NCBI RefSeq assembly: GCF_018977255.1
Contig: NW_024704752.1
Span: forward strand, 806,001 to 870,000
DNA from: Callorhinchus milii
Lineage: Eukaryota
Direction: 5' to 3'
Length of the DNA: 64,000 nt
Shown: in pieces, positions 7,812 to 54,834 of the stretch
Position numbering within the stretch: the stretch's first letter is position 1
Layout of the letters: every line of letters starts with the position of its first letter
The notes under the pieces: generated by a model
Database searches by the model: none
Seen by the model: the letters and a program-made list of their open reading frames with translations, nothing else
What the model was told of the DNA's origin: nothing
Program-made: the position numbers and the translations under genes

Positions 7812-8974
7812 AAAACTAGCTGCCTAGATATGTAAGCTGCAGCTAAAAGTGAACATAATTTAAGTGCAGGTTAGTTTTACTGAAATGTAACAGGAAACTA
7901 ACTAAAGTACATGTAAACTGTCTAATGTTTAGTCGTTTTGTGCATGGTGACATGGAATTTTTAAGTGTCACTTTACATGTTTTATATTCTCTGCCAATAA
8001 ATTATTTATGTTCAACATTGATACCTGATGTTATTGTTATCTGATGCAATTAATTTATTTACAGATGTTACACTTGTATTGCTGCAATCAAACTTCCCTT
8101 TGATTTATTCTCTTAATTTCCAATAGCATTGTTGTCCTTTACTGATTCCCCCCAACACTGGACACAATCCACCTCAACTCTCTCAAATCCTTCTCACATG
8201 CATTTGCCATTGTAACCAATAATCCACGACACTATAGACACTATAAGCAATTAAGCAGTAAGTAAATAAATAAATGAATAAGTAAATAATTCAGAGAAAT
8301 GATAGACAATGAATCTGTAAACTGAATGATTCTGAACCATTTGTGAGTGTAGGTTAGGAAGGAGGACGATCGTGAATAAATGTTGTTGTGGCTGCAGTGG
8401 TGGAGGGAGAACAAATAATTATTACTTCTACGTTATCTCCAAATTAACCAAATTTGCTCGATCTGTGACAGAGGTCTCAAATCATTGTCACGTGTTACAA
8501 AGGACTACTTCAGTAACAACACTGTGAGGCTGTCCTACAGCACGATAAAGAATTGCCAACAACAAACTTGCGGAATAAAAGCCATTGTGGTGGAACATTC
8601 AGAAATAAAACGGTAAAACATAGACAAGAGGCGGAAACTCGTCTTTGCAGCTCTCAATGAATGCATTGTGTTCCATCATCTTCAAACGATTACAAATTAG
8701 AATAAGGCAAATAAGAATAATACTGTTTAAGGAATTTAACCATCACAATGCCACATGAAGGATAATTTTAAAAAGTTGCTTCCATGATTACACAGAGTGG
8801 AAATCCCTGATGAGATACACTAAGATACTTGGCCACAATCGTTACAGCTGACAGTTAATTTTCCGGAGGCACATAGGAAATTATATTCTACTGGGATTTT
8901 AAATAATTTCCAAATTACCTTCCACTGAATTGCATCAAAGGCGGCAATTCCCAGAAAGCCCCGCTGTAGTACAA

Positions 8975-8981
8975 TATAAAA
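8975..8981 (+). promoter_or_regulatory. TATA-like box of gene 2 (same in genes 3 and 6)
   Basis: TATAAAA about 88 nt upstream of the ATG. TATA-like boxes also precede gene 4 (33428), gene 5 (41856) and gene 7 (60190). Confidence 0.45.
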
Positions 8982-9062
8982 CACACATACGGGGACGTAT
9001 ATATTGGACAATTGAACTTGTCTGCTCGGATAACTGCAACTTCTGATTGACGTAAATAGTAA

Positions 9063-12000
9063 ATGTATGTGGGAAATATGTTTTACTTTTTCCTGTTAGA
9101 ATTGCTCAGACTTGAGGCCGGATGGGGAAGCGGTGAATATAGTTGTAAACTTCAAGGGAAGTTCGATTTACCTGAACTGTCAAAGGACGGAGACATCATT
9201 CTGGGGGGACTTTTTAACTTGCACATGGACAGGGTTGAGAATGTGCATTCCTTTACTGTCCGGCCAAAAGCAGAACAGTGCAAACGGTGAGTGGATTCTC
9301 AGAGTAATTTATAAAAAGCTATAGTTAAGTGTATAGTAAATGTATATGGGTGTCTGACACATGTGGAAACCCACCAACATGCCTTCGAGTATCCAAACCA
9401 AGCTGACATTTCCATGCATTCTGCCTACAAGTCCTGTAGCTCAGTGGTTGGAGCACTCGCCTCGCAAGTGAGAGACCTTGGCTCGATTCCTGGCTGGGTG
9501 AAATGTTGGTCAAGTTTCTTTACTCCACATGCCTCTGTTTACCTTGCAGTAAGGAGAAACAGGGTTAATAGGCGATTGTCAGATCAGTTTACTGGGAGTA
9601 ATAATTGCTTAAAAAAAAATGGGTCACTTGAATGCACGACTGTGGAGGGACGCTGCTCTGCGCAATTAGTTGCTGCATTTCACCCACAAAATATGCAGTC
9701 AATTTACCTTGCAGTATATTCTGTGAAGCGCTTTGAGACATCTCGAAGACGTGAGAAGGTGCTATTTACAAATGGGAATCCCAGCAATAGATTGTTGGAA
9801 TGGAATGCGCGCTCTCTCCCTGGAGGGAAGCATCCTGCCTACCTAATTCCGGAAAGTATTAAGCGCAGATTAGCAAGAGCCAAGGGTTGGAGAGCCCAGA
9901 GGGTGCGTTGGGTTACTGCTGGAGTCTAACCAGTTAAAACCACATAGCTCGCCATTGGTATTAATGCCCGGCAAGCTTTCCCGCTACTTGTCCAGTGAGG
10001 AGCACCCTACCCATTAGTGCTTTGGCTGCAGGGTTTTCAGGAGCTGAGTGAGATGACTCCCTGCCCCAGTGACTGGTCTGCTCTTCCAGGTCCTGCCGAT
10101 GATTCAGCTGGGCTGTGCTGTCATTAGCAGTGCCCTGGAATACCACAAACCCACTTGTCTTTGGAACCGATTTCGTCCGGCTTTGGTTATCCTCAAACGA
10201 GGAGAGTCACTCGTTGTTTGTTCGACATCCAACAAGCATGGGTTTGACCCCTCACAAGGTGGTTGGTTTGTATAACGTGCACCTTGCGAGTTTCCTGGTG
10301 AGCAACGCATCTCAGCATGAAATGCATGAGGGCATTTGTCACCATCTTCCTACCCACAGATCAGGCACACATCCCTTCCAATTGACCGATACTTCCACCA
10401 TTTGGAGGTGCTTAGTTTAAGCAGCAGTTGCTTGCCTCTCTGAAGGACAAACAAGGTGGATTCCAGGTAATGGACGTTCAAACATATGTTCAAGGATTCA
10501 GACTCCAGGTAACGCTGTAAGGAAACAGACAGAAAGGTGCAATTGAGATCGCAAATCCAATTAGTAATTGCAAAAAGGCAAATCACTGATCTACCAATTT
10601 ACCAAACTGTAACATTGAATAAATGGCTATTGACTGTAATACGATTGATGTTTTCTCGTAGTACCGATTTTCAGCCAGTAATGAAAACACCTGATCTCAT
10701 TCCATGAAGCTAATAATTTGTGTAACTCCAAAGGTTTGATTTCAGAGGCTTTCGCTTGGCTCAGACCATGATTTTTGCCATCGAAGAAATCAACAGAAAT
10801 CATCTCCTTTTGCCAAATGTCACACTGGGATTCAGGATCCACGATGATTGTGCGTCATCCAAGATTGTGACAAAAGCGGCCTTAGCTCTTGTTAATGGGG
10901 AGGAAACCGGTTTGGGTTATTCTTGCACAGGACAATCTAATGTCATCGGGATCGTTGGCACACAAGGATCCTCTGAGTCTATTGCAGTAGCAAGAGTTAT
11001 TGGTCCTTTTCAAGTTCCAATGGTAACGTTGTATGTTTCTAGTAGCATAATGTTTGCAAGGTACATATTACGATAACATAATTCTGTGCACATTTAATCC
11101 AAACTATATACAGTATTGTCTGTTGATGATAATATTTTTGCTGAAATAAAATATTCAATTATTAGACTGAAGATTAGTTTTACCAATTATGATAATCTGG
11201 TAAAACTGTGAAAGCACTTTTCCACTTCCTGATGGAAATCTCTCTGATATAAACATGAACACTACACAAGCATACACACACACACGTACACATTGTTTTC
11301 CATTGAATTCAGATTTATTTTTCTGCATTTTTCCAATATTTCATTCATGATAAGCAAAAATATGTCATGAAAGTTGCGCATTGAAAACATATACAAATAA
11401 GTAGTTTTAGCTGTTTAGACTCCAACAGTTATCCCAATGCACATCCTGAGGGCTCTAGCCAATCTGCGTCTAATACTCTCTGGAATTATGCAATGAGAAT
11501 TGGTCCCTGCAACGACACAGTGCTAATTCCATTAAAACCTTCTAGAATTTGATTTTCTCTTATCAAATGAAAGAATTATACAAATTGATTAGTGTGAGTT
11601 TAAATTCTTTATGTACCACCAAAAGAGAAAATAAAAAAGGCAATAAGACTATTCTATATTGGAAATACATAAATACACGTTCACTGTAATGGAAATTGTA
11701 GTTACATATTGTCAATTAAACCATAACCTACTAATTCTCATTCACAACATTTTGAAGCTTAAATAAGTGGAGTCTATATCTTAAGCTACCCTGAGTTCAA
11801 TAATGACTCAGCAACTTATGAGTTTTCAAGTATTCAGGATTTGCTTTTAGAGATCAAATATATTAATGATAATCTAAATGTCTTTTATCAATCACAGGTC
11901 AGCTACTTTTCCACTTGTGTTTGTCTCAGCAATAGGAACGAATACCCCGTATTTTACAGAACTATACCCAGTGACTACCATCAGTCCAAGGCTTTAGCTC

Positions 12001-15000
12001 AAATCATTAAGAAGTTTGGATGGACGTGGATTGCGACTATCAGAAGCAACAATGACTATGGTAACTTTGGAATGCAGGCATTTGTAGACATTGCGCAGGA
12101 ACTTGGCATTTGCATTGCCTTCTCGGAATCATTTTATAGAACAGATCCACTTGAAAAGTTAAAAAAAATTGTAAATATAATTAAATCATCTACAACTAAA
12201 GTGATTGTGGCTTTTGTTGCTAAAGCGGATATGGAGATATTGCTCACGGAAATTATAAGTCAAAATGTCACAGGAATACAGTGGATAGGAACAGAAGCTT
12301 GGATAACAGCCAAACTCATTTCTCCAGAAGAAAGTGTAAGATTTCTCATTGGGACAATTGGCCCTGCAATTCCTATGTTAGAAGTAAAAGGATTGCGAGA
12401 ATTTCTGCTTAAAATCCATCCTTCTAGTTTTCCCGGAAATGCTTTTGTGAAGAAATTTTGGGAAACTGCGTTCCAATGTACATTCCCATCAGGAAACACA
12501 AGCCAAATAACTGCTTTATCCACATGGCAACAATGCACCGGCAAAGAAGACCTGACACAAATACACAATGTATATTCTGATGTCAGTGTGGATGGAAGTT
12601 CTTACAATGTGTATAAAGCTGTGTACGCATTTGCTCATGCACTTCACAATATGCTCTCGTGTGAGAAAGGAAATGAACCATTTATGAACAATACCTGTGC
12701 ACGTGTGTCAAATTTTCAACCATGGCAGGCAAGAAAATTATGTAATTGAACATAGTTATTTAGCGTCGAGTTTATAATGTATTTGTCAAATGTTGCATTT
12801 CCTTTATAAACTTAATTATTGATCTTTAACTGTTATTTCAATGTTCAAGTAACAAAAAAAACAAAAAGATTTGAGAATTTTCTATTACCATGTTGTTTTT
12901 CATATTGTTGAACAGCTTCTTCACTACCTACAGTCTGTAAATTTCACAACTACATCCGGTGACAGGGTTTATTTTGATGGAAATGGAGATCCGGTGGCCA
13001 TGTACGACTTGATAAACTGGCAAATCGATTCGAGAGGTGTTTCTGAAATTAAAATAATTGGATCCTACGATGGGTCTGCGTCTCCGGGTCATGAATTAAC
13101 CCTGGACGAGGAGGCTATTGTATGGAAGAGTGGTCAAAACAAGGTATCTTTCAGCAGATATGGTTTTGATACTAAAGTAGGTTATCTATTTTGTCACAGA
13201 TTGCAATGTTATGTAGCAACTTCAAACAGAGTCATTGTGTGCGCACAAACCTAATTTATTTGTAAAGTATAATTAATGCAAAACACAAATTCGACTAAAA
13301 CATGGAGTGAAAGATGTGAGACATACGGAGGGGAGCAATGATTTTTTGAATTTGGAAGGAATGCTTCTTGGAGAAGGAAACACTTCTATAAATGGTTTGT
13401 ACACTTCCACCTGGTAAAGAACACTATAAGAGGGTACAAAATGGTTCTATTCAGATAGAAATCAGTTTTACATTTCAATTAAGATTCATTTAAGTACATT
13501 AAGTAGAAAAGTGGTTACACGTAGAAAGATAAAAGGTCCCATTGGTGACTCACGTTACCAAATCGGTCAGATTGAGAATCATAGCACAAAAGGAGGCCAT
13601 TGCACCCATGACAATATAATAATGATATTAATAATAATCCTTGCATTTGATATAGCACTTTCTCACATCTTCTCGACGCCTCAAAGATCTTCACAGAATA
13701 TACTGCAAAGTGAATTGACTGTATAATTGTGGGCGAAACGCGACAGCCAATTGCACACAGCAGCGTCCCCACAAACAGTCGTGGATGGAAGTGAACAATT
13801 TTATTATTGTTTTTTTTTTGAAGGATTATTATCAGGTTTGTGGAGTAAGGAAACTTGCTCAAGGTTTCGCGCTGCCGGGAATTGAACCCAGGTCTTTCGC
13901 TTGCGAGACAAGTGCTCTAACCACTGAGCTACAGGATTCGACTATATAGTTAAACCCATAAGAACCCACTTTCCCCAAAGTCTTGCAATTTTTTTTTCCC
14001 TTTCCCCATAGCCTGGGCCAATAGAAAATTGCGGATGCACATTTTTTTCCACGTAATTCACTACAAACAACCCCTGTTACAAACCTGCCACAGATGTAGT
14101 TTCTGGCCCGCGGACCTCCCGCCTGTTTACCTGACGTACATGTGGGTGGGGCGTAATATTCATATTACGTGCATTTTGTTTATTGTTTGTTACTTCATCA
14201 AAGAAATATTTTCATGTTAGACAATCAATGAGAGATTAGCAGATAGTGTAATTAGAGGTGACGCCCGGTGGAAAAGAAATTCTCCTAAGTATTCACTTGA
14301 CCATTTCGAAAGAATTAAAGAATTATTATTCAAGGACAACACATTTTCAAACAGTTCATATTTCAAATTCAAATAACCATTGATTCCATAATTAATAATA
14401 ATAACCCTTGCATTTGATATAGTGCGCAATCATGTCTTCTAGATGTCTCAAAGTGCTTCACAGAATATACTGTAAAGTCTAGTGACTGTGTTTTGTGGGC
14501 AAAATGCGGCAGCCAATTGAGCACAGCCGTGTTCCTCCAACAGTCATGGATTAAGTGACCAAATTATTATTATTATTATTTTTAAGGTAATATAACCCCC
14601 GGAAATGTGATCTGCCAATCGATTAACAACCGGATTCCTACTTACTGCTAGGTAAACAGGGGCGTGTGGAGTAAGAAAACATACCTTGTTTCGCCCTGCC
14701 CGGGAATGAAACCCAGGTCCTCTTACTTGTGAGGCGAATCCTCTAACCATTAAGCTACAGGACTCCACTTCAGGTGGTTGTTTCTTCAGTTCAGGCAATT
14801 AAACCACCAAATGATTGGAGCCTGTGAATTGGGTAACCTTTTCCCTGGAACCAAGTTTGATCATTTGGACTGCAGCAGGAATGTTGGTGCATGAAGCTAC
14901 AAAGTCCTGGAGTCCTGTAGCTCAGTGGTTAGAGCACTCGCTTTGCAAGTGAGAGACCTGAGTTCAATTCCAGGCAGGGCGAAACCTTGGGCAAGTTTCC

Positions 15001-15210
15001 TTACTCCACACGCCTAATAATAATCCCTCCAAAACTAAAAACAATAATTAAATTGGTCATTTTCAATCTACGACTGTTTGTGGGACATTGCTGTGCGCAA
15101 TTGGCTGCCGCGTTCGCCCACAAATATACAGTCAATTCACTTTACAGTGTGTTCTGTGAAGCGCTTTGGGACGTCCTCCCGACGTGAAAAGCGCTATATC
15201 AAATGCAAGG

Positions 15211-15251
<41 letters not shown>

Positions 15252-17702
15252 AGATCTTCCTGATATGCCCTTTTATCTTCATCAAAATAAGCACAAAGGC
15301 TAACTTCACTTGCAGCAGATGCATATATGTAATGCCTGAAAGTGGCTAGAGTGTAAGAATAGATAACACTGTGAGTAATGGTTCTTTCGGGTAGCATGGG
15401 AATGGGAGTCGAGGTCAAAAATGTTAGTTAGAATCCTCACAAATGGTGAGGGTTCAAGTGACCCTGTGGTAATGGAAGTAGGTGTTTGTTCCATTCAACA
15501 TACAATGCACTTCGTACTTCACATGTACCTCATGTACTTCATCTTCTGGGCAATGGCTGAACAATCATTAGACACCACCTAAACTTTGGATATGATAGCC
15601 ACATTTTAGGGTTACCTGAGCTCAGAATCCAAAATAAATATTGCACGGTATTTTAATATCGCAGATTTTTTTTAGGGGGGTGGAAGGCAGTTGAGGGCAG
15701 TGTTAATAACCTTTCATGAATATATCTTACTGCTAGGTAAACAGGGGCGTGTGGAGTAAGAAAACATACCCTGTTTCGCCCTGCCCGGGAATGAAACCCA
15801 GGTCCACTTACTTGTGAGAGGTTGATAACTTCATTTTATATCTAATTATTTAACGTGGTATTTCTTAATCGAAGATGCCACGTTCTGTTTGCAGTGAGAG
15901 CTGTATTCCTGGAACAAGAAAAGTTGCCAGAAAAGGCCAACCCGTGTGTTGCTTTGACTGTACAGAATGTGCTGAGGGAGAAATCAGCAACATCACAGGT
16001 GAGTGTAAAATTCCTCTTCCTATTTACAACAACCATTTGCCCTCCACACAGGGTAGCGTCTCAGAGCGCTTAACTGTGGCGGAGCCTGACTCTGATCTGG
16101 GCGTGGATAGCTGTCAGCACTGGCGAACACGAAAGAGGGGAGAGAGGGGGTGAGGTGGAAGGATTGAGGAAGAGTGTTCCAGAGTTTAGGGGAGTAGCAG
16201 CTGAAAGCACAACGTCCAATGGTGGGGCAGTGGGGGTGGGGGTTGAGCAGGAGGCTGGTGCCAGTCGATTTGGGAGTGAGGGGGTCGGAAGTGTAGGGAA
16301 TTGCCAGGGAGTGAATGGATTTGAACACGAGAGTGAGATCTTGACGTTGATCCGTTCGGTGATGGGGAGCGAGTGGAACCTGGGCCACAACTGGTGAGAT
16401 GTGGAGATTGGTCCGGCTCCGTATGCGGGCGGCAGAGTTTTGAATCAGCTGATCTTGTGAATGGTGGAGCTGGGGAGACAGGAGAAGTGTTTTGGAGCAA
16501 TCCAACCTGGAAGTGACAAACACGTGCACGAGGATTTTGGCTGCATTTCGGTAAGGTACGGTCGGAAGTGGGCAATATGGCAGAGGTGGAAGCAATCGGT
16601 TTTGATCAGGGACCTGATGTGGGGGAGGATGAACAGTTGGGGGTTGAACTGGACGCCGAGGTTGCGCACTGGTACAGTGAGTCTGAGGAAGAGCCCAGGA
16701 AGGCTGAGGAGTTGAGATCCACAGGAGATTTTTGAAAACTCCCTTTAGTAATATTCATGCCATACTTACTGAATTATCGTACCTTTCCCAGATTCCACAG
16801 ACTGCATTAAATGCCCTGAACAATATTGGCCCAATCAGCAGAGAGATCGTTGCCTACCAAAGGAAATAGAGTTCCTCTCCTTTACCGAAATGCTGGGAGG
16901 TGTATTGCTGACATTGGCTCTGGTGGGAGTGAGCACCACAATAAGTATTGCCATTGTCTTCTTCACACACAGAGACACTCCTATTGTTAAAGCCAACAAT
17001 TCTGAGCTCAGCTATCTGCTTCTCTTTGCATTAACGCTGTGTTTTCTGTGCTCAGTGACTTTCATTGGCGAGCCCTCAGTCTGGGCTTGCATGTTGTGCC
17101 ACACAGCATTCGCTATCGCTTTCGTTCTCTGTATTTCCTGTATTTTGATTAAAACAATCCTTGTGATTCTGGCGTTTAAGGCAACTCTTCCAAACAACAA
17201 CATGGCCAAATTGTTCGGGCCTGCTCAGCAGCGTTGGAGTGTATTCCTCCTTACCTCTGTTCAGTGCCTGATATGTACTCTCTGGTTAACTATATCACAC
17301 CCATTTCCCATGAGAAACACAGAATATTACAGAGAGATTATCATTCTGGAATGTGACCTGGGCTCTGTGAGCGCCTTTTATTCTATGGCGGGATATATTG
17401 CTTTCCTGGCCGGAGTGAGCTTTGTGCTGGCGTTTCTAGCTCGGAAATTACCTGATAACTTTAATGAGGCTCAATGTATAACCTTTAGCATGCTCACCTT
17501 TTGTGCTGTTTGGATCACTTTTATACCAGTTTACATCAGCTCTCCTGGGAAATACACCGTTGCTGTCGAAGTCTTTGCTATTTTAGCCTCGAGTTGTGGG
17601 TTATTGTTTTGTATTTTTGTTCCTAAATGTTACATTATTTTGATAAAACCTGAAATGAATACCAAAAAGCACTTGATGGGCAAAGTACCTGTAAATAAAT
17701 AG
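9063..17702 (+). CDS. V2R/OlfC-type class C GPCR, gene 2, 6 exons, about 868 aa
   Basis: Exons 9063-9286, 10734-11022, 11898-12728, 12916-13143, 15875-15998, 16792-17702; total 2607 nt in frame. The intron 3 donor is GC (CAG|GCAAGA). Same class C motifs as gene 1. Confidence 0.9.
9348..10330 (+). repeat. Unclassified interspersed repeat (starts GGGTGTCTGACACATGTGGAAACCC) with nested SINE at about 9430-9770
   Basis: Homologous copies at about 23120-24125 (+), 31270-31700 (-) and 53410-53648 (-). Confidence 0.65.
13620..13940 (-). mobile_element. tRNA-derived SINE
   Basis: Reverse complement of the SINE at 1-311, head and tail present. Confidence 0.8.
14395..14768 (-). mobile_element. tRNA-derived SINE (older variant)
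   Basis: Reverse-complement SINE, head ends GCTACAGGACTCCA. Confidence 0.8.
14908..15250 (+). mobile_element. tRNA-derived SINE (young, long TTA tail)
   Basis: TGGAGTCCTGTAGCTCAGTGGTTAGAGC head through to a (TTA)n tail. Confidence 0.88.
16010..16715 (-). mobile_element. L2 LINE 3' fragment in gene 2 intron 5
   Basis: Minus-strand translation shows [18 protein letters not shown] and PKLWNTLP, typical of the L2 ORF2 C-terminus; absent from gene 3 intron 5. Confidence 0.82.
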
Positions 17703-18429
17703 TTATCATCTATAAATGCGGCATGATCTTCGGGAATATGATAAAAATGAAGGCAAATTCTGAAATAAATATAACAAGAATCATGTGCTTGTTTGTTTGT
17801 TTGTTTGTTGTCGATGTTCCATTGTTTGACATACAGTCGTAATTTAATCTGGTAAAATAAAGTCACTTTTAACATGTGATAAAAACACTGTTTTACAGTC
17901 AACAGCAATAAATGTATCATGCTTTGTCTTCCAAATTGTGGGTTAATTCCTTTCCAATGCAATTGATGTTTGAGTATATCCGAGAAACACAGATTTGTTT
18001 AACTCGAGGTCAACATGCCTTCTGTTTAGGCATTTATTTTCATGTGGAATCCCACAATGCCACTTGGATTACAATATATTTCACTGGATTTCCTTAATTT
18101 CTGTAAGTCAAACATCAACTCTTAAAATAGTAAACATTGATTACATTAAATTACTAAGAGGTCCATGTGGAAGTTTCAGAATAAATCACTTAAAGTCCGT
18201 CTGTCCAGCACATTGAGACATCCTCCCAACGTGAAAGAGGCTATACAAATGTAATTTTGTTGTTGTTGTTGAAAAAGCATCTTTATGTGCTCCCTCAAGA
18301 GTATTATGATCATCTGTCAATTGTCAATAAATCTGCATTCCATCACTGTGCATACATGTGCAATTCAGGGAATCCACTGTCATCACCCCCCTCCTCAAAA
18401 GAAAACACCCTTGAACCATCCAACCTCAC

Positions 18430-19346: not shown

Positions 19347-19434
19347 AAAACTAGCTGCCTAGATATGTAGAGATGCAGCTAAAAGCGAACATAATTTAAA
19401 TGCAGGTTAGTTTTACTGAAATGTATCAAGAATA

Positions 19435-19630
19435 CAATAATAATCCCTCCAAAAAAACAAAACAATAATAAATTGGTCATTTTCAATCTACGCCTGTTTG
19501 TAGGACATTGCTGTGCGCAATTGGCTGCCGTGTTCGCCCACAAATATACAGTCAATTCACTTTACAGTGTGTTCTGTGAAGCGCTTTGGGACGTCCTCCT
19601 GACGTGAAAAGCGCTATATCAAATGCAAGG

Positions 19631-19660: not shown

Positions 19661-19662
<2 letters not shown>

Positions 19663-44900: not shown

Positions 44901-47701
44901 CAACAACAAAAGTGGTGGTGGCTTTTTCGGCTACGGGAGAAATGCGGCTTTTATTTAGGGAAGTTGTACGTCAAAACGTCACGGGAATCCAGTGGATTGG
45001 TAGTGAAGCCTGGGTTACAGCAGAACTGCTTTCTCCAGATGAAAGCAATCGATTCCTCACTGGGACAATGGGCCCTGCCATTCAAAGGACAGCAGTGGTG
45101 GGATTACGAGATTTCCTTATGAAAGTCCATCCGCAGAAATTCCCTGGAAATGCTTTAGTAAAGGAATTCTGGGAAACAACATTCAGTTGCACTCTATCGT
45201 CTGCCAAAACAACAAAGGAACCAAATGATTTATCACCATATCAACAGTGCACAGGAAATGAGAATTTGAATGAAATACACAATGCATATTCTGACATAAT
45301 TACTGATGGAAGCTCCTATAATGTTTATAAGGCGGTGTACGCCTTTGCTCATGCTGTGCACAACATGTTGGCATGTGAATACGGAAAAGGCCCGTTTACG
45401 AATAAAACATGCGCAAATGTTTCTATTTTTGAACCTTGGCAGGTAAACGCATTTTGAGCACCAAATATGAAGCACTGACTTTCCAATGTATTGATTCTAG
45501 TTATTACATTGTTTGTTGCTTGTCAAACATAATGTCATACAATCTTTGTTTGGTCACCATATTAATCATTGTCATTGTTTCTGTAAAGCGCTCTGAGAGA
45601 TTACTAGGTGAAGTTGCTACACTATATAAATGAAATTATATTGTTAATCTTGCAATAAAGAATTTAAGGGTAGTGTATATGTACACCTGATGAAACATTT
45701 TATTTTAAAGTTTGCCCATGCTGCATGGTCAGATAAAGACCACTTTCTTATCTTTTTCAGCTGCGACATTATATGCAGTCAGTAAATTTCACCACTAACA
45801 CTGGTGACAAAGTCTATTTCGATTCAAATGGGGATCCAGTCGCTAAGTATGACTTGATAAACTGGCAAAGCAACACACAGGGCTTTCCAAGGATTGTGAC
45901 TGTGGGCTATTACGATGCTTCCACACCTCCCGGGAAAGAATTGATGCTAAATATAAGGAAACTAGAATGGAATGGTGGCAATAATAAGGTAGATATGTGA
46001 AAGAAAAATTAAGTCTTCCGTGTGTTCAAAACCAAATGTGGAGTTCTCCAGCTCAGTGGTTAGAGCACTCACCTCGCAGGCGAGAGGACCTGGGTTTGAT
46101 TCCTGGGCAGGGCGAGGTGGAGTGAAACCTTAGGCAAGTTTCCTTAGTCCACATGCCCCTGCTTACCTAGCAGTAAGCAGGAATCCAGTTGCTAGTCAAT
46201 TGGTGGATCACTTTTCCGGGGATAATAATACCTTCAAATTTTTTTAAAATAAATAATTTGGTCACTCAATCCACAACTGTTTGTGGGACGCTGCTGTGTG
46301 CAATTGGCTGCCGCATTTCATCAACAAAACACACAGCCAATTCACTTTACAGTATATCCTGTGAAGCGCTTTGAGACATCTCAAAGATGTGATAAGGCGC
46401 TATATCAAATGCAGGGATTATTATAAATACAAGGATTATTGGCGTGATGTGCAATGCTATCTATTTACAAACTTTATGTTTATTCATAATGTATTGAAAG
46501 GTGTAATATTGCATACATAACAAACACGTTTATATCAATTTAATCACGGTAAGATCCCACGTGCAGTTTGTGCAGAGAGCTGCCTCCCCGGCACCCGGAA
46601 GGTCCACAGGAAGCGACAACCGATCTGCTGTTTTGACTGCACAGAATGTGCTGATGGTGAGGTCAGTAACACCACAGGTATGGTTTAATCTAGCACATTA
46701 TTTTCAAGTTCGTCTTTCCGAACGTTTGCCCAGATAGCTTAAAGTTTGTACAGTACTGACGTTCACCAATTATATTATTTCTCTCAGATGCGTTGGATTG
46801 CATCAAGTGCCCTTTGGAATATTGGACCAATCAGAGGAAAGATAAATGCATACAAAAAGAAATTGAGTTTCTTTCCTTTGAAGAGATGCTGGGAATTGTA
46901 CTAGTTACGATTGGATTGGTAGGGATCGGCGTAACGTTAACAACAACAGTTATCTTCTATCAGCACAGAGATACCCCTATTGTTAAGGCGAACAATTCTG
47001 AGTTGAGCTTCCTTCTTCTGTTTGCATTGACTCTGTGTTTTTTGTGCTCTCTCACATTTATTGGTGAACCCTCAATGTGGTCTTGCAAGCTTCGCCGCGT
47101 GTCTTTCGGTATTGCTTTTGTTTTGTGCATCTCCTGTATTTTGGGAAAAACAATCCTGGTTCTAATGGCCTTTAAGGCAACGCTTCCCAATAATAACATG
47201 ATGAAATGGTTTGGACCCACACAGCAACGATTAAGTGTTTTCCTTCTCACACTTATTCAGAGTTTAATCTGCGCTCTATGGTTAACATTCTCACCCCCTT
47301 CCCCTGTAAAAAACATCAAGTACTACAGGGACATTATTATTTTAGAATGTGATGTTGGATCTATAACAGCATTTTACTGTGTATCGACCTACATTGGTCT
47401 TTTGTCTGCTGTGTGTTTTATTCTTGCATTCCTAGCCAGGAATCTGCCAGATCATTTTAATGAGGCTAAGTGTATAACTTTCAGCATGCTTATTTTTTGC
47501 ACAGTTTGGATGGCTTTCATTCCAGCTTATGTCAGTTCGCCTGGGAGATATACTGTGGCTGTAGAAGTGTTTGCTATTTTGGCATCCAGCTTCGGTTTGC
47601 TTCTCTGCATTTTTGTTCCAAAATGTCGCATAATCTTGCTGAAACCAGAAAACAATACAAGACAGTATATCATGTCCAAAGATCCTTCAAAGAAGCTTTA
47701 A
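41932..47701 (+). CDS. V2R/OlfC-type class C GPCR, gene 5, about 868 aa
   Basis: Exons 41932-42146, 43400-43691, 44609-45442, 45761-45988, 46554-46677, 46788-47701; GT-AG; total 2607 nt in frame. Confidence 0.92.
46037..46423 (+). mobile_element. tRNA-derived SINE
   Basis: Head, body and tail present. Confidence 0.82.
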
Positions 47702-49060: not shown

Positions 49061-49462
49061 AATTGAGAAAAGTTGTCCAAAAAGTGTACTTGAAAGAAAA
49101 ATAACAAAACAATAATTGGTGTGTAGAACAACTAACCATCACAATCCCAAATGGTATAAAGGATAATTTAAAAAGTTGCTTCCATGATTATGCAGAGGGG
49201 AAATCCCTGATGAGATACACTAAGATACTTGGCCACAATCGTTACAGCTGACAGTTAATTTTCCAGAAGCACATAGGAAATTATATTCTACTGGGATTTT
49301 AAATAATCTCCAAATTACCTTCCACTGAATTGCATCAAAGGCGGCAATTCCCAGAAAGCCCCGCTGTAGTACAATATAAAACACACATACGGTGACGCAT
49401 ATATTGGACAATTGAACTTGTCTGCTCGGATAACTGCAACTTCTGATTGACGTAAATAGTAA

Positions 49463-52400
49463 ATGTATGTGGGAAATATGTTTTTCTTTTTCCTGTTAGA
49501 ATTGCTCAGACTTGAGGCTGGATGGGGAAGCGGTGAACATAGTTGTAAACTTCAAGGGAAGTTCGATTTACCTGAACTGTCAAAGGACGGAGACATCATT
49601 CTGGGGGGACTTTTTAACTTGCACATGGACAGGGTTGAGAATGTGCATTCCTTTACTGTCCGGCCAAAAGCAGAACAGTGCAAACGGTCAGTTGACATAT
49701 ATTTTTCCGTACAATTTTAATTAATTGAATGGTTTTGATGAAATCACACATTTTGCCATTTACAGTATATAGTTTGGGACATGACATGTGAATGTGACTG
49801 CCAGGCAGGGGAGAAGGCGAACTGGATGGACCTTGGTCTTCTTTTGTCTCACAGTTTTTATGTTGTAAGACCCAGGGAAATAAAATATTAAGTTATGATG
49901 AGTAAATCATACGAGATTTTGAAATATACTTTTAAAATGTATAAATGTAAACATTGTAGTTATGAATTCATCACCCAATATACATTGATTGATTGTATTA
50001 GTAAATGATTCTGAAAATTAAGTAATTCTTCAAGACCTTTAAGCATTTTGAGACTAACTTAAATATAATAATAATAAATAATAATCCTTGCATTTGATAT
50101 AGCACTTTTCACGTCTTTTAGATGTCTCAAAGCACTTCACAGAATATACTGTCAAGTGAATTGACTGCATATTATGTGGACGAAACGCGTTTAGTTGACA
50201 GCGTTGGCAGTTCACCACCTTGATCATACATAATACGGAAGATAAAAATAATGCCATTTCCAATCTGTTATTGTAATAGGTTAGTCAGATCCGCACCCCA
50301 TAAATGTGTCTATGGTTGTTGAGGTTCCCTTCTGTTGGCTACACGGTGCAAGACTTGAAATTAAATCAGTCAGATTTCCATTCCAGATCCACAGATGTAA
50401 GAAACTGAAGGTTGCACCAGTCTTAATATAACAGATGGAAAGACGCAATTGATTAACCTTTGAGAACCCAAATCCAATGTGTAATTGCAATGAGGTAAAT
50501 CACTGAACTACCAATTCACCAACCTGTGTCTATGCATCAATGGTATGTTGTCAAATTGAAATAACTTTGGTAGTTATACAACCCTTGTAATGTCATTGAT
50601 GTTATGTCTTAGAAACCATTTTCATAAGATAACCAAAAGAGGTGATCTCATTCCATGATGCTAATAATTTGTGTAACTCCAAAGGTTTGATTTCAGAGGC
50701 TTTCGCTTGGCTCAGACCATGATTTTTGCCATCGAAGAAATCAACAGAAATCACCTCCTGTTGCCAAATGTCACACTGGGATTCAGGATCCACGATGATT
50801 GTGCGTCATCCAAGATTGTGACAAAAGCGGCCTTAGCTCTTGTTAATGGGCAGGAAACCGGTTTGGGTTATTCTTGCACAGGACAATCTAATGTCATCGG
50901 GATCGTTGGGACACAAGGATCCTCTGAGTCTATTGCAGTAGCAAGAGTTATTGGTCCTTTTCAAGTTCCGATGGTAATGTTGTATTTCTATTGTAATAAA
51001 TAATACATAATTATCTGCACATTTAATGCAATATTGTGGAGTCCTGTAGTTCAGTGGTTAGAGCGCTCGCTTTGCAAGTGAGAGACCTGAGTTCAATCCC
51101 AGGCAGAGGGCGAAACCTTGGGCAAGTGTCCTTACTCCACACAGAGCCTAATAATAATCCCTCCCAAACCAAAACCAATAATAAATTGGTAATTTTCAAT
51201 CCACAGCTGTTTGTGGGACACTGCTGTGCGCAATTGGCTGCTGCGTTCGCCCACAAATATACAGTCAATTCACTTTACAGTATGTTCTGTGAAGCGCTTT
51301 GGGATGTCCTCCTGACGTGAAAAGCGCTATATTAAATGCAAGGATTATTATTATTATTATTATTATAATATAGTCTATTGCAAATAACATGTTTGCTTAA
51401 ATAAAATATTGATATTATGAGACATTGGGATGATGTGAAGCTGCTATATCAAATGCAAGGATTATTGTTATTATTATTAGATGAATTTATCTAGTAAAAC
51501 CATGAAGGTGCTTTGCCAATTCCTAATGATTATGATCACTGCACACTGAGCGCATTTTCTTTCATTATAATCAGATTTACTTTTTCTGCACTTTACCTTT
51601 ATTTTGTTGCTGATAGGTCAGTTACTTTTCCACCTGTACGTGTCTCAGCAGCATTGAAGAATACCCTACCTTCTTCAGAACGATACCAAGCGATTCCCAT
51701 CAGTCTAAACTTTTAGCGCAACTTGTTCAGATGTTTGGATGGACGTGGATTGGGACAGTGAGCAGCAACAATGATTACGGTCGATTTGGGATACAAGCAT
51801 TTTTGGAAGCTGTTCAGAAGCTGGGAGTTTGCATCGCCTACTCGGAGTCCTTCTACAGAACCGACTCTGTAGAAAAAATTGCCAAAGTTGTAGACACAAT
51901 TAAAAAAGGGTCGACAAAGGTTGTGGTGGCACTTGTTTCTCCGGGAGACATGCTATTTTTGCTAAAGGAAGTTGTGCGCCAAAATGTGAGCGACATACAG
52001 TGGCTAGGAAGTGAAGCCTGGGTTACAGCAGAACTCCTCCCTTCATGGCAAAGTACCAGGTTTCTAGTTGGGACCATTGGGCCTGCAATCCCTCGGTTCC
52101 ACATATCAGGACTAAGAGAATATCTTCTTAAAGTTCACCCTTCTTTGTTTCCTGACAATATTTTAGTCTACGAATTTTGGGAAACAATGTTCAAATGTAT
52201 TCTAAGGGAAGACCACTCGAAAACACGGTCAAACACTGAAGCTCCAATCCATAGATGTACAACAAACGAAAATCTAGAAGAAAAAAGCAGCACATATTCA
52301 GATATAACATTGGACGGTAGTTCTTACAATGTATATAAAGCTGTCTACGTGTATGCTCATGCACTTCATAACATGTTGCTGTGCAGCGAAGGCAAAGAAC

Positions 52401-54834
52401 AAAAGAATAATAAAACATGTGCAGACATTACAAATTTAAAACGATGGCAGGTAAGCTATCTGTTACCAAAATCTAACATGTGAGATTTACTGAGTGAAAT
52501 GTGACAGAAATAATAATAATCCTTGCATTTGATGTAGCGCCTTATCACGTAACTGAAATGTCTTAAAGCACTTCACAGAATATATTGAAAAGTGTATATT
52601 TTGTGTTGTTCAAATTCATCATTAACTTTAATGCCCACAATGATTTCAGGATAAAAGTGTCCTTTGGCTGAAGTCTTACATAATGCTAATATTATCTGTG
52701 TGTGTATGTGTGTCTATGTGTGAGTGTATGTGTGTGTGTGGGTGTGTGTGTATATGTGCATGTGAGTATTTCTACCATTGGTTTTGTAAATTAATTTGGA
52801 ATTTATCTCGTTCCAATTCTCTTCTCACAGTTGCTTGATTTTATACGTTTGGTAAACTTCACCACGAGGACAGGTGACAGAGTGAACTTTGATAACAATG
52901 GGGATCCAGTTGCCACTTATGATTTGATAAACTGGAAAATTAATGTCAATGGCTCTGCTGAGATTGTGAAAGTGGGTTATTACAATGGAGCTGCCCCTTC
53001 AGGACAACAACTCACACTGGATGAGGAACATGTGATGTGGAGCAGTGGCAGCAATAAGGTATGGACTTGAGGTAAAAGTCAGTCCCATTTTGTGTGCAGA
53101 TGTTTTGGAATATCAGAATATCACAAGTGGTAATTAATATATGAAATAAATTAAAGCAATGGGCTGGTCAGTGGTGATAGCCAGAAGAAGAGTGAAAGGA
53201 GGGGTGGGATTTGTTTATTTGGTTTCGTTCAGAGAGTTGTTGGGATGTTGATGTCCTGCCAATTAAAGGGGTAGAGCCAGAGTCGATTTTTGATTTGAAG
53301 AGGGAAGGTAGAGACTGGAATGGGTATGGGGAGAGGGCAGGGCAGTGGGCCTGAAAGTCCAGCATGCTTTGAGAGCAGCAACCTCAATGACAGGATATGT
53401 ATATATTCCAGCATTTGCACCAACACAGACTCTGGGGTTCCCAAGCCCTGGCTCTTGCCAACCTGTGCCTAATACTTTCCAGAATTAGGTAAACAGGATG
53501 TGCCCCCCATGGAGAGAGAGAGAGCATATTACATTCCAACAATCTATCTCTGGGATTTCTATGTGTGGGTGGGATACATCGAATTCTCAGCTTGGTTTGG
53601 ATACTCTTAAGCATGGTGATGGGTTTCCACATGTGTCAGACACCCAGCTGACCAAAAATTGACCAATCCTGGAAATTGAACACAATATATAGATCTTCTC
53701 TCTGTGCAGGTTCCTCAAGCAGTCTGCAGTGAGAGATGCCAACCTGGATCAAGAAAAACCGTGAGGAAGGGACAACCCATCTGTTGTTTTGACTGCACAC
53801 AGTGTGCAGACGGTGAAATCAGCAACACAACAGGTGAGTGTTTGATGAAATTGTGTAAATATATGACTCTCTTCACTGCTAAATTTTAATTTTATGTACA
53901 ACTTTATAACTTTATTTCAGATTCTCTCTTCTGCTTAAAGTGCCCGTGGGAATATTGGTCAAATGAGCGGAGGGATGAATGCATACCAAAGAAGATAGAG
54001 TTTCTTACATTCGACGAGAACATAGGGATTGCATTAACATCACTGGCCATAGTAGGAGTGGGTCTCACTGTCGCCATTGCAGCTGTTTTCTTCCAATACA
54101 AGGACACTCCTATTGTTAAGTCCAACAATTCTGAACTGAGTTTCCTCCTCCTGTTTGCATTAGCACTGTGTTTCCTGTGTTCGCTCACTTTCATTGGTCA
54201 ACCTTCGGTTTGGTCTTGCATGCTACGACGCACTTCATTTGGGATCTCCTTTGTCCTGTGCATTTCTTGTGTTTTGGGGAAAACTATCATTGTATTGATG
54301 GCATTTAAGACAAAGTTTCCCAATAATAATAGGGTCAAATTATTTGGACTCGGGCGACAACGATTCAGTATTTTTGCCCTCACATTTATTCAGATTTTGC
54401 TGTGTGCTCTCTGGTTAAGTCAAGCAGCGCCTTTTCCATTGAAAAACGGCAATTACTACAGAAACATTATTATTTTGGAATGTGATGCCGGGTCTACAAC
54501 AATATTCTATTGTGTGTCAGGATATATTGCCTTGTTGTCCTGTGTAAGCTTTATTCTAGCGTATTTAGCCCGAAAACTGCCAGACAATTTCAATGAGGCC
54601 AAATATATAACCTTTAGCATGCTGATCGTCTGTGCTGTTTGGGTAACGTTTATCCCAGCTTATGTCAGCTCTCCAGGGAAATACACTGTGGCTGTGGAGA
54701 TGTTCGCAATTTTAGCATCCAGCTTTGGTTTATTGGTTTGCATTTTTGCTCCGAAATGTTATGTGGTTTTATTGAAACCAGAATGCAATACAAAAAAACA
54801 CATCATGGGTAAAGTTCCTTCACCTAAATCTTAA
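49463..54834 (+). CDS. V2R/OlfC-type class C GPCR, gene 6 (exons 1-2 shared with genes 2/3), about 870 aa
   Basis: Exons 49463-49686, 50685-50973, 51617-52450, 52831-53058, 53710-53833, 53921-54834; GT-AG; total 2613 nt in frame. Confidence 0.92.
51035..51368 (+). mobile_element. tRNA-derived SINE (young)
   Basis: Near-identical to the copies at 1-311 and 14908-15250. Confidence 0.88.
52697..52765. repeat. (TG)n-rich microsatellite
   Basis: Imperfect TG run in gene 6 intron 3. Confidence 0.8.
53410..53648 (-). repeat. Unclassified repeat terminus, same family as 9348
   Basis: Ends GGGTTTCCACATGTGTCAGACACCC, the reverse complement of the family start. Confidence 0.65.

What the first reader, a model, noticed from the sequence alone, without database searches (positions are those of the whole stretch)
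8736..54834. Modular mosaic V2R cluster: receptors built from shared promoter/exon cassettes
Seen: genes 2, 3 and 6 share near-identical promoter+exon 1 (about 8736-9288, 22503-23059, 49133-49688) and exon 2. Genes 1, 2 and 3 share a near-identical exon 6. Gene 1 exons 1-2 and gene 6 exons 3-6 are clearly divergent. Genes 2/3 therefore read as a gene-6-type 5' half plus a gene-1-type 3' half. All seven genes have the same exon phases. Inference: repeated exon-level gene conversion or exon shuffling combines N-terminal and C-terminal halves of the Venus flytrap domain with a shared 7TM. This could be a combinatorial way of diversifying chemoreceptors.
Basis: partly seen in the sequence, partly recalled or inferred. 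Interest (0 to 1): 0.85.

Follow-up and report, generated by a model that had tools for sequence, protein, structure and literature searches.

The report
Mosaic smell-receptor genes from gene conversion
Seven neighbouring smell-receptor genes really do share near-identical pieces in a patchwork, but this looks like the ordinary copy-and-paste recombination that happens between tandem gene copies, which here also produced one intact hybrid receptor, and not a special system for shuffling parts.

Summary
The window holds seven tandem V2R/OlfC-type class C GPCR genes on the + strand, each with six exons in the same phases. Six are complete and intact; g7 runs off the window.

- Exons 1 and 2 are 98.2-99.6% identical in g2, g3 and g6, but 54-64% to g1.
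- Exon 6 is 98.6-99.7% identical in g1, g2 and g3, but about 70% to g6.
- Exon trees conflict: AU p=2.9e-5 and about 1e-156.
- Synonymous divergence differs 20-100-fold between exons of one gene pair.
- Run-length permutation tests give 0 of 10000.

My reading has three layers:
1. An older hybrid gene, with a g6-type 5' module joined to a g1-type 3' module. Non-coding K is about 0.3.
2. An 11.5 kb tandem duplication giving g2 and g3 (K about 0.2).
3. Recent homology-limited ectopic gene conversion (K 0.03 or less). It also homogenised an intron, 1.4 kb of 3' flank and a dead exon fragment.

Contigs from two other individuals show about 3x depth on the shared blocks and bridge g6's left junction. 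No long reads and no RNA support were available.

A dedicated combinatorial cassette mechanism is not supported. First readers noted similar patchwork in neighbouring windows of this genome (unchecked).

The parts
950..7811 (+). g1: intact V2R/OlfC-type gene. Exons 950-1155, 1758-2055, 2644-3483, 5507-5734, 6687-6810, 6907-7811. 'A-type' throughout.
9063..17702 (+). g2: intact hybrid gene. Exons 9063-9286, 10734-11022, 11898-12728, 12916-13143, 15875-15998, 16792-17702. Exons 1-2 are g6-type, exons 3-6 are g1-type. Intron 3 has a GC donor.
22834..29230 (+). g3: intact hybrid gene, tandem duplicate of g2. Exons 22834-23057, 24373-24661, 25858-26688, 26876-27103, 28114-28237, 28320-29230.
33460..39979 (+). 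g4: intact paralog with no near-identical block shared with the others. Exons 33460-33695, 34811-35102, 37302-38132, 38296-38523, 38827-38950, 39066-39979.
41932..47701 (+). g5: intact paralog with no near-identical block. Exons 41932-42146, 43400-43691, 44609-45442, 45761-45988, 46554-46677, 46788-47701.
49463..54834 (+). g6: intact gene. Exons 49463-49686, 50685-50973, 51617-52450, 52831-53058, 53710-53833, 53921-54834. Exons 1-2 are 98-99% identical to g2/g3; exons 3-6 are 64-76% to them.
60291..64000 (+). g7: paralog cut by the window end inside exon 6. Exons 60291-60499, 60781-61072, 61428-62252, 62473-62700, 63691-63814, 63919 onward.
8737..9291 (+). 5' flank plus exon 1 block, g2 copy. 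Runs from about 330 bp upstream of the ATG to 5 bp past the donor. TATA-like hexamer at 8975.
22504..23062 (+). 5' flank plus exon 1 block, g3 copy. High identity to g2 continues to about 23186.
49133..49691 (+). 5' flank plus exon 1 block, g6 copy. Identity to g2/g3 collapses 5 bp after the donor, where a high-copy repeat begins.
50650..50983 (+). Recent exon 2 tract in g6 (about -35 to +10 around exon 2), 98-100% to g2 10699-11032 and g3 24338-24671. The 190 bp upstream (50460-50649) is only about 76% identical, which I read as older homology.
6905..7801 (+). Exon 6 tract in g1, matching g2 16790-17686 and g3 28318-29214. It has 8 variable columns in 897 bp. The left edge is at the acceptor AG; the right edge is 10 bp before g1's stop.
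7571..19104 (+). Tandem duplication unit 1. It starts inside g1 exon 6 and ends 1.4 kb past g2's stop.
19106..30632 (+). Tandem duplication unit 2, colinear with unit 1. Identity is bimodal: 74-78% vs 94-99% by blastn.
19106..19432 (+). Orphan 3' fragment of exon 6 plus g1-type 3' flank at the duplication junction. It is 97.2% identical to g1 7571-7896. 48 diagnostic columns are g1-type and 5 are g2/3-type.
12486..13235 (+). Zero-mismatch g2/g3 tract: the 3' third of exon 3, all of intron 3, exon 4 and about 90 bp of intron 4. Partner in g3 is about 26446-27195.
12136..12335 (+). Unconverted patch in exon 3 of g2 vs g3, with 30 mismatches in 200 columns. Over codons 67-150, pS is 0.27 and pN/pS is 0.36.
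16750..19104 (+). g2/g3 tract at 99.2%: exon 6 plus 1.4 kb of non-coding 3' flank. It ends at the end of the duplication unit. Partner is 28282-30632.
11353..11873 (+). Interval in g2 intron 2 where the relationship switches from g6-type (alignable up to about 11352) to g1-type (alignable from about 11874).
51040..51369 (+). tRNA-derived SINE in g6 intron 2, interrupting the old g6-g2/3 homology. Other copies lie at 1-313, 9430-9774, 14911-15233, 19436-19653 and 36898-37171.

Best explanation
This is a real germline mosaic in a tandem V2R/OlfC receptor array. It was produced by ordinary recombination between paralogs, in three layers.

Layer 1 (inferred). An older event made a hybrid gene, the ancestor of g2/g3. 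Its 5' module (5' flank, exon 1, intron 1, exon 2 and the start of intron 2) is related to g6. Its 3' module (from the end of intron 2 through exon 6) is related to g1. The switch lies in intron 2, between about 11352 and 11874. Non-coding divergence of each module from its relative is about K=0.3.

Layer 2 (shown). An 11.5 kb tandem duplication (7571-19104 to 19106-30632) produced g2 and g3. It left an orphan piece of g1's exon 6 at the junction. Baseline non-coding divergence is about K=0.16-0.27.

Layer 3 (shown as a pattern; the mechanism is inferred). Several recent short tracts of 0.3-2.4 kb of non-allelic gene conversion reset patches to 97-100% identity. These are exon 6 among g1/g2/g3 and the orphan, the 5' flank plus exon 1 and exon 2 among g2/g3/g6, and exon 3'-intron 3-exon 4 between g2 and g3.

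Tracts end where homology ends: at diverged introns, SINE or other repeat insertions, or the end of the duplication unit. I think that is why they look exon-shaped. Selection keeps exons similar enough to keep converting, while introns drift out of range.

The net effect today is mostly homogenisation. One by-product is an intact hybrid receptor. By alignment to CaSR, its ligand-binding domain takes residues equivalent to about 63-164 from one lineage and 165 onward from another.
For: Gene family and intactness.

Block identities.

Synonymous divergence:
- g1 vs g2/3: exon 3 0.36-0.47, exon 4 0.54, exon 5 0.29-0.38, exon 6 0.020-0.025.
- g6 vs g2/3: exon 1 0.022, exon 2 0.03-0.06, exons 3-6 1.2-3.0.

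Incongruent trees: (g2,g3,g6) has bootstrap 100 in exons 1 and 2. The branch holding (g1,g2,g3) has 100/78/94/100 in exons 3/4/5/6. AU tests reject the alternative groupings, p=2.9e-5 and 1.3e-156.

Run tests: 0 of 10000 permutations for the four key pairs.

Old duplication plus patchy resetting: units 1 and 2 are colinear over their whole length, with 7573 of 11534 bases aligned. Block identities are 97.2, 75.8, 97.0, 78.0, 73.8, 96.7, 90.3, 74.0, 93.6 and 99.2%. Gap-free non-coding identity is 77-86% against 99.4% in the 1402 bp 3' flank.

Conversion is DNA-level and homology-driven. A zero-mismatch tract spans all of intron 3. The 3' flank is converted. The non-functional orphan fragment is 97.2% identical to g1, although its surrounding unit is about 76-86%.

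Older homology of the modules: g6 vs g2 non-coding is 75.6-76.9% (K 0.28-0.29). g1 vs g2 intron flanks are 60-77%. These segments are single-copy by depth.

Which gene is the hybrid: a Callorhinchus milii partial protein (P0124) pairs a g1-type exon 2 (90.8%; 64% or less to the others) with a g1/g2/g3-type exon 3 (72-77%; 64% or less to the others).

Not an assembly artefact, as far as could be tested. In contigs of two other individuals the shared blocks have word depth 26-50 (exon 1 block) and 20-27 (exon 2 block), against 7-12 for g6's unique exons. Contigs bridge g6's unique upstream sequence into the block (48994-49264 with 0 mismatches; 48994-49200). The four 'other letters' seen in the block (49170, 49265, 49268, 49519) are exactly the g2/g3 states.

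Precedent: conversion among OlfC paralogs detected with GENECONV in catfish (PMC6588630, passages). Promoter homogenisation by conversion proposed for V1R genes (PMC1955453, passages).
Against: Long-range linkage in g6 (exon 1 block to exon 2 block to exon 3) is not bridged by independent data. The contigs break at high-copy repeats right after exon 1 and after exon 2. No long reads were available.

Only one genome was seen. So conversion is inferred from within-genome patterns, and the direction of each transfer is unknown.

The choice of g2/3 as the hybrid rests on parsimony and on one partial protein. That protein itself looks mosaic: 91% in exon 2 against 72-77% in exon 3.

Some tract edges are strikingly exact. 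The exon 6 tract begins at the acceptor AG, with 8 differences in the 15 bp just upstream. The g6 exon 1 block ends 5 bp past the donor. I explain these by loss of homology and a repeat insertion, but I did not test this against a null model of edge positions.

The gene order (g1, hybrid, hybrid, g4, g5, g6) is not the simple product of one unequal crossover between g6 and g1.

The two runs guessed to be RNA gave no exon coverage, so expression of any of these genes is unshown.
Confidence: 0.8

Rival explanations
1. Assembly artefact. The near-identical blocks are collapsed or mis-polished copies, or g6's 5' end is a mis-join, so the mosaic does not exist in the animal.
For: An earlier assembly of the V2R cluster of the elephant shark (the closest relative found; source species unconfirmed) was described as 'not properly assembled' (PMC9018814, passage). 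Independent contigs do not bridge the right edges of g6's exon 1 and exon 2 blocks. The exon 6 tracts were not checked with reads.
Against: In two other individuals the blocks have about 3x the depth of g6's unique exons, as expected for three real copies. Single-copy-depth contigs cross g6's left junction carrying g6-specific variants. The paralog-specific variants recur. Each copy has its own private differences and its own colinear flanks. Polishing errors cannot turn about 65% or about 88% identity into 99%.
Confidence: 0.05
2. A special modular mechanism. Either exon-precise conversion is templated by spliced RNA/cDNA, or there is a selected 'promoter-leader / ligand core / 7TM' cassette system that recombines modules to diversify receptors or to equalise receptor choice.
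For: Tract edges sit at or within a few bp of splice sites for exon 6 (g1) and exon 1 (g6), and within -35/+10 for exon 2. The 5' flank is co-homogenised in three genes with different ligand-binding cores. First-reader notes report similar patchwork in neighbouring windows (unchecked).
Against: Introns and flanks are converted wherever they are still alignable: intron 3, 1.4 kb of 3' flank, and about 330 bp upstream that includes a TATA-like hexamer 88 bp before the ATG. A dead orphan fragment is converted too. No introns have been lost. The exon 6 tract stops 10 bp before the stop codon rather than running into the 3' UTR. g4, g5 and g7 share no module. Every gene has its own full exon set.
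Confidence: 0.07
3. Same processes, opposite polarity. g2/g3 carry the native combination, while g1 (exons 1-2) and g6 (exons 3-6, or else its exons 1-2 as a recent recipient) are the altered genes.
For: Direction of transfer cannot be read from one genome. The g6-g2/3 exon 1/2 identity (dS 0.02-0.06) is compatible with g2/3 donating to g6. P0124 is itself mosaic.
Against: This needs two hybrid genes instead of one. P0124 shows that the g1-type exon 2 goes with a g1/g2/g3-type exon 3 in another gene. In the exon trees the exon 2 clade of g2/g3/g6 sits next to g7 (support 66), and g6's exon 3 sits next to g7 (support 96). This weakly suggests g6's 5' and 3' parts belong together.
Confidence: 0.15
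4. No transfer at all. The identical exons are simply conserved by strong purifying selection.
For: The 7TM exon is generally the most conserved part of class C GPCRs (established knowledge).
Against: Synonymous sites are homogenised as well (dS 0.02 against 0.3-0.5 in neighbouring exons of the same pair). So are non-coding flanks and a pseudogene fragment. Other paralog pairs have saturated dS in the same exons.
Confidence: 0.01

Closest known systems
Concerted evolution by non-allelic gene conversion in tandem chemoreceptor arrays (OlfC subfamily 9 in channel catfish, PMC6588630; V1R clusters in mouse, PMC2644715; V1R promoter homogenisation, PMC1955453)
   Same: Tandem paralogs with discrete tracts far more similar than their surroundings. 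Significant by Sawyer-type tests. The promoter region can be included, and gene trees are blurred.
   Different: Here the genes have six exons, so tracts are chopped into exon-centred patches by diverged, SINE-laden introns. Conversion also links genes that are otherwise 64-76% identical (g6 vs g2/3). The organism appears to be a cartilaginous fish, for which the library searches listed no description of V2R conversion.
Chimeric fusion genes from unequal crossing-over or conversion between tandem paralogs (delta/beta-globin fusions, PMC4041002, search listing and abstract start only; Lepore haemoglobin and red/green opsin hybrids, recalled)
   Same: An intact gene whose 5' part and 3' part come from two different paralogs, with a switch point in an intron.
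   Different: The parental types are not neighbours in the order a single unequal crossover would leave. The hybrid was itself duplicated afterwards and is still exchanging sequence with both relatives.
Variable-exon/constant-exon loci (clustered protocadherins, UGT1A; recalled)
   Same: On the surface: several receptors share an identical C-terminal module or an identical 5' module.
   Different: In those loci a single physical set of constant exons is shared by splicing. Here every gene has its own copy of every exon, and identity is maintained by recombination.

Membership tests
V2R / OlfC (class C GPCR chemoreceptor) gene | Venus-flytrap (ANF_receptor) ligand-binding domain | tested here: met
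   PF01094 E=1.5e-46 and 1.5e-42 on exon 3 ORFs. In g2, exons 2, 3 and 4 match profile positions 3-77, 78-314 and 316-351 of 353; exon 4's match (E=0.00038, 20 bits) is below Pfam's 25.4-bit cut-off.
V2R / OlfC (class C GPCR chemoreceptor) gene | Cysteine-rich NCD3G linker and 7tm_3 transmembrane domain | tested here: met
   Exon 5: PF07562 E=2.9e-17. Exon 6: PF00003 E=2.8e-79.
V2R / OlfC (class C GPCR chemoreceptor) gene | Six-exon structure with conserved phases and an intact reading frame | tested here: met
   Seven of 7 genes have the same exon layout. Six of 6 complete genes have no internal stop.
V2R / OlfC (class C GPCR chemoreceptor) gene | Nearest relatives are annotated V2R/OlfC/CaSR-like receptors | tested here: met
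   The best hits are fish 'calcium-sensing receptor-like / vomeronasal type-2 receptor' proteins. For exon 3 the best are cartilaginous fish.
V2R / OlfC (class C GPCR chemoreceptor) gene | Expression in olfactory sensory neurons | tested here: inconclusive
   Two runs guessed to be RNA (tissue unknown) covered only repeats.
Non-allelic gene conversion / concerted evolution | Discrete tracts much more similar than flanking homologous sequence | tested here: met
Non-allelic gene conversion / concerted evolution | Homogenisation of synonymous and non-coding sites, not only protein sequence | tested here: met
   dS 0.005-0.06 in tracts against 0.13-0.54 in neighbouring exons. Intron 3, the 3' flank and the orphan fragment are homogenised.
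Non-allelic gene conversion / concerted evolution | Segment trees significantly incongruent; run-length test significant | tested here: met
Non-allelic gene conversion / concerted evolution | Paralogs within a species more alike than orthologs between species in the converted segment | not tested
The protein searches gave no hit above 91% on any exon.
Non-allelic gene conversion / concerted evolution | Non-reciprocal transfer (donor unchanged) | not testable with these tools
   This needs pedigrees or population haplotypes.
Lepore-type fusion by a single unequal crossover | Hybrid gene with one switch point between a 5' parent and a 3' parent | tested here: met
   The switch lies in intron 2, between about 11352 and 11874. 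Exon trees agree.
Lepore-type fusion by a single unequal crossover | Gene order is as expected from one crossover between the two parents | tested here: not met
   The order is g1, g2, g3, g4, g5, g6. The hybrids lie next to the 3' parent and upstream of the 5' parent, with g4 and g5 between.
Variable/constant exon cassette locus (protocadherin/UGT1A type) | Many alternative exons spliced to one shared physical set of constant exons | tested here: not met
   Each gene has its own six exons and splice sites. The 'shared' exons are separate copies with private differences.

The most novel reading that the evidence does not exclude
Homogenisation in this cluster is truly exon-delimited and module-wise because of a special mechanism or selection. 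One possibility is conversion templated by spliced transcripts. Another is selection to keep a common promoter-leader module and a common 7TM module on receptors with different ligand cores, giving a germline 'mix-and-match' architecture for class C chemoreceptors across the whole cluster.
Probability: 0.07. Interest if true: 0.7.

Novelty: new member of a known kind. Interest (0 to 1): 0.35.

Why it matters
This is a clean, quantified example of how a multi-exon chemoreceptor array evolves. It shows an intact hybrid V2R whose ligand-binding domain is split between two lineages, plus ongoing conversion that keeps resetting exon-centred patches, including the 5' flank.

In practice, whole-gene trees, orthology calls, duplication dating and dN/dS scans for these V2Rs will be wrong unless they are done module by module. 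One example: the apparently 'hypervariable' patch in exon 3 is just unconverted old divergence (pS 0.27, pN/pS 0.36), not positive selection.

The hybrid also offers a natural experiment. g1, g2/g3 and g6 form a ready-made swap series for asking how much the first 170 residues tune ligand specificity.

It does not establish a new mechanism.

Tried and rejected
1. Selection-only explanation: rejected by dS.

2. Positive selection on the exon 3 patch (12136-12335): pN/pS is 0.36 and pS 0.27, which equals the baseline. It is read instead as an unconverted remnant.

3. cDNA-templated conversion as the main mechanism. I considered this because of the sharp edges at splice sites. I set it aside because intron 3, the 3' flank and the 5' flank are co-converted and no intron is lost. 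It is not excluded for the g1 exon 6 tract.

4. A single unequal crossover as the origin of the hybrid: the gene order does not fit.

5. Source organism. Three protein searches gave no hit of 95% or more. The best was a Callorhinchus milii fragment at 90.8% on one exon. A chimaera or other cartilaginous fish is therefore likely but not shown. The length filter of that tool hides full-length proteins.

6. Independent confirmation of the exon 2-exon 3 junction of the hybrid from database proteins: none found.

7. Expression: no exon coverage in the two runs guessed to be RNA.

8. Literature. Searches listed no paper describing exon-module hybrid V2R/OlfC genes. This covers only that library. [quoted passage not shown] PMC2668830 holds none of the words conversion, unequal, chimer or recombination.

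What I saw of each paper:
- Passages only: PMC6588630, PMC3590772, PMC9018814, PMC1955453, PMC2644715.
- Search listing and abstract start only: PMC4041002.
- Recalled, not from a call: the CaSR ligand-contact residues, Lepore, opsin, protocadherin and UGT1A comparisons, and the theory that selection keeps exons conversion-competent.

Full report
WHAT IS THERE

The window has no N. It holds seven tandem genes on the + strand. Their long exons carry ANF_receptor and 7tm_3 domains. For g2, exons 2, 3 and 4 match ANF_receptor profile positions 3-77, 78-314 and 316-351 of 353 (exon 4's match is below Pfam's cut-off). Exon 5 matches NCD3G and exon 6 matches 7tm_3.

I located exon borders from alignments of the seven copies and from generic splice-site and frame tests. 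All seven genes have the same six-exon layout and phases. Exon sizes are about 206-236, 289-298, 825-840, 228, 124 and 905-914 nt. The six complete genes read 867-875 aa without internal stops. g7 is cut by the window end. Acceptors are AG. Donors are GT, except a shared GC donor in intron 3 of g2 and g3.

The nearest database proteins are fish 'calcium-sensing receptor-like / vomeronasal type-2 receptor' proteins (3070 proteins with E of 1e-20 or less among 5821 candidates, best 71%). For exon 3 the best hits are cartilaginous fishes. One Callorhinchus milii fragment reaches 90.8% on g1's exon 2. The source is therefore probably a chimaera or another cartilaginous fish. This is not shown, because the tool's length filter hides full-length proteins.

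THE OBSERVATION

- Exon 1: g2/g3/g6 98.2-99.6%; g1 to them 53-54%.
- Exon 2: g2/g3/g6 98.3-99.3%; g1 to them 63-64%.
- Exon 3: g1 to g2/g3 84-86%; g2-g3 94.8%; g6 to them 67%.
- Exon 4: g1 to g2/g3 79.8%; g2-g3 100%; g6 64%.
- Exon 5: g1 to g2/g3 89-92%; g2-g3 96.8%.
- Exon 6: g1/g2/g3 98.6-99.7%; g6 70%.

The exon 1 block starts about 330 bp upstream of the ATG at the same point in all three genes (8737 / 22504 / 49133). It is 96.3-98.0% identical over about 560 bp.

The pattern is far beyond chance. Exon trees put (g2,g3,g6) together with bootstrap 100 in exons 1 and 2. They put (g1,g2,g3) together with 100/78/94/100 in exons 3-6. AU tests reject the opposite groupings, p=2.9e-5 and 1.3e-156. 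Longest runs of agreement at polymorphic sites are reached by 0 of 10000 permutations for g1-g2, g1-g3, g2-g6 and g3-g6. Control pairs give 1637, 6784 and 59 of 10000.

IT IS SEQUENCE TRANSFER, NOT CONSERVATION

Synonymous divergence between g1 and g2/3 is 0.36-0.47 in exon 3, 0.54 in exon 4 and 0.29-0.38 in exon 5, but 0.020-0.025 in exon 6. It is saturated in exons 1-2. Between g6 and g2/3 it is 0.022 in exon 1 and 0.03-0.06 in exon 2, but 1.2-3.0 in exons 3-6.

THREE LAYERS

Layer 1: tandem duplication. The stretch 7571-19104 is colinear with 19106-30632 over its whole length, with 7573 of 11534 bases aligned. The first unit begins inside g1's exon 6. The second therefore begins with an orphan exon 6 fragment (19106-19432) followed by g1-type 3' flank. 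At columns that distinguish g1 from g2/g3, 48 are g1-type and 5 are g2/3-type.

Identity along the two units is bimodal: 97.2, 75.8, 97.0, 78.0, 73.8, 96.7, 90.3, 74.0, 93.6 and 99.2%. Without gaps, deep non-coding parts are 77-86% identical (K 0.16-0.27), while the 1402 bp 3' flank of exon 6 is 99.4%. An old duplication with later patchy resetting explains this. A recent duplication does not, because non-coding parts have no divergent donor that could have overwritten them.

Layer 2: the resetting tracts. Between g2 and g3 there is a zero-mismatch tract of about 750 bp, covering the end of exon 3, all of intron 3, exon 4 and the start of intron 4. Next to it lies a 200 bp patch of exon 3 with 30 mismatches. 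That patch has pS 0.27, equal to the baseline, and pN/pS 0.36. It is an unconverted remnant and not a positively selected hotspot.

Among g1, g2 and g3, exon 6 has only 8 variable columns in 897 bp (6905-7801). The tract starts at the acceptor AG, with 8 differences in the 15 bp just upstream. It stops 10 bp before g1's stop codon.

The orphan fragment, which has no function, is 97.2% identical to g1, although the rest of its unit is far more diverged.

Layer 3: older homology. g6 shares more than the near-identical exon blocks with g2/g3. About 190 bp of intron 1 upstream of exon 2 is 75.6% identical, and about 250 bp of intron 2 is 76.9% identical once a SINE is removed (K 0.28-0.29). About 40 bp upstream of the exon 1 block is also alignable. 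These stretches are single-copy by depth. g1 and g2 share alignable intron flanks around exons 3, 4 and 6 at 60-77%.

So the g2/3 ancestor has a 5' module related to g6 and a 3' module related to g1. Both have similar age, older than the tandem duplication. The switch lies in intron 2, between about 11352 and 11874.

WHY THE TRACTS LOOK EXON-SHAPED

Introns here are full of tRNA-derived SINEs and other high-copy repeats that differ between copies. Tract ends coincide with such insertions, with unalignable intron sequence, or with the end of the duplication unit. Where an intron or flank is still alignable, it is converted along with the exon.

This fits homology-limited DNA-level conversion. 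I recall, but did not test here, the theoretical point that purifying selection keeps exons similar enough to go on converting while introns drift out of range.

WHICH GENE IS THE HYBRID

Parsimony favours one hybrid (g2/3) over two (g1 and g6). The C. milii fragment P0124 pairs a g1-type exon 2 (90.8%; 64% or less to the others) with a g1/g2/g3-type exon 3 (72-77%; 64% or less to the others). So that pairing exists in another gene. P0124 is itself uneven, however, and the polarity remains an inference.

IS IT AN ASSEMBLY ARTEFACT?

Four runs of one study, from four samples of the same organism, hold 0.79-0.82 of the sampled words of g6. I laid two of these four, plus two runs guessed to be RNA, on 48900-54850. 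All were Logan contigs.

- Word depth is 7-12 on g6's unique exons 3-6, 26-50 on the exon 1 block and 20-27 on the exon 2 block. That is about three copies.
- Contigs at single-copy depth run from g6's unique upstream sequence into the block: 48994-49264 with 0 mismatches in one individual, and 48994-49200 in the other.
- A single-copy contig (50160-50674) abuts the shared exon 2 contig (50660-50969).
- The only 'other letters' in the block (49170, 49265, 49268, 49519) are exactly the g2/g3 states.

Against this, the right edges of both blocks run into high-copy repeats and are not bridged. No long reads were available. The exon 6 tracts were not examined with reads. The RNA-guessed runs covered only repeats, so expression is unshown.

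WHAT THE HYBRID MEANS FOR THE PROTEIN

By alignment to solved calcium-sensing receptor structures, exon 2 of g2 corresponds to residues 63-163 and exon 3 starts at residue 165. From memory, the amino-acid-contacting serines of that receptor lie on both sides of this border. If so, the pocket of g2/g3 would be composite. This is a lead, not a result.

Exons 1-2 provide about the first 170 residues, not half of the flytrap domain.

COMPARISON WITH WHAT IS KNOWN

- Gene conversion among OlfC paralogs was detected with GENECONV in catfish (PMC6588630, passages).
- Conversion is described for mouse V1R clusters (PMC2644715, passages).
- Broad promoter homogenisation by conversion was proposed for V1R genes (PMC1955453, passages).
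- Hybrid genes from recombination between tandem paralogs are classical (for example PMC4041002, listing only).
- A survey of V2Rs in cartilaginous and basal ray-finned fishes does not use the word conversion in its main text. It notes that the elephant shark cluster was not properly assembled in the older assembly (PMC9018814, passages).
- My six library searches listed no description of exon-module hybrid V2R genes. The library is partial and supplements were closed.

The locus is not a variable/constant exon system, because every gene has its own full exon set. It is not the simple product of one unequal crossover, given the gene order.

EARLIER NOTES OF THE SCAN

First-reader notes on this window agree with what I found here:
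- g6 carries the g2/3 5' end.
- There is an 11.5 kb duplication breakpoint.
- There is an exon 3 patch.

Notes on neighbouring windows report similar patchwork and another hybrid gene. Those are unchecked and count only as leads that the phenomenon is cluster-wide.

THE JOINED STEP

All database queries were single exons or ORFs by reference. Concatenation happened only inside local scripts, for stop counts, trees and the run test.

VERDICT

The best explanation is an old hybrid gene, a tandem duplication and ongoing homology-limited gene conversion. This is a new, well-documented member of a known kind of process and not a new diversification mechanism.

Noticed in passing
window 40006-40476: A tandem array of 19 copies of a 25 bp unit (90% matches), starting 27 bp after the stop codon of g4.
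   Followed up: partly
window 1-313, 9430-9774, 14911-15233, 19436-19653, 36898-37171, 51040-51369: A tRNA-Ala-like-headed SINE of about 300 bp. Copies are 92-97% identical and it is extremely abundant in the genome (word depth up to about 2 million against about 10 for single copy). Copies sit in introns of g2, g4 and g6 and at the duplication junction.
   Followed up: partly
window 22978 (g3 exon 1) vs 9207 (g2) and 49607 (g6): g3 has a private G-to-A change that turns the second glycine of the conserved Gly-Gly motif in exon 1 into arginine. g3 is otherwise intact.
   Followed up: no
window 12729-12730 and 26689-26690: Intron 3 of g2 and g3 uses a GC donor instead of GT. The other five genes use GT.
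   Followed up: no
window 20822-22498: An insertion of about 1.7 kb specific to the g3 copy, just upstream of its exon 1 block. It holds a 232 aa ORF on the minus strand (21193-21891, no Pfam match) and a tRNA-Val-like element (22076-22146). It is probably a transposable element.
   Followed up: partly
protein P0124 (Callorhinchus milii fragment) against window g1-g3: The fragment is itself uneven: 90.8% to g1 in exon 2 but only 72-77% to g1/g2/g3 in exon 3. This hints at further module exchange elsewhere in the family.
   Followed up: partly
window 49146-49398 (5' part of the exon 1 block): Within the block, sites where g3 and g6 agree against g2 are interleaved with sites where g2 and g3 agree against g6. 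This suggests several small exchanges rather than one.
   Followed up: no
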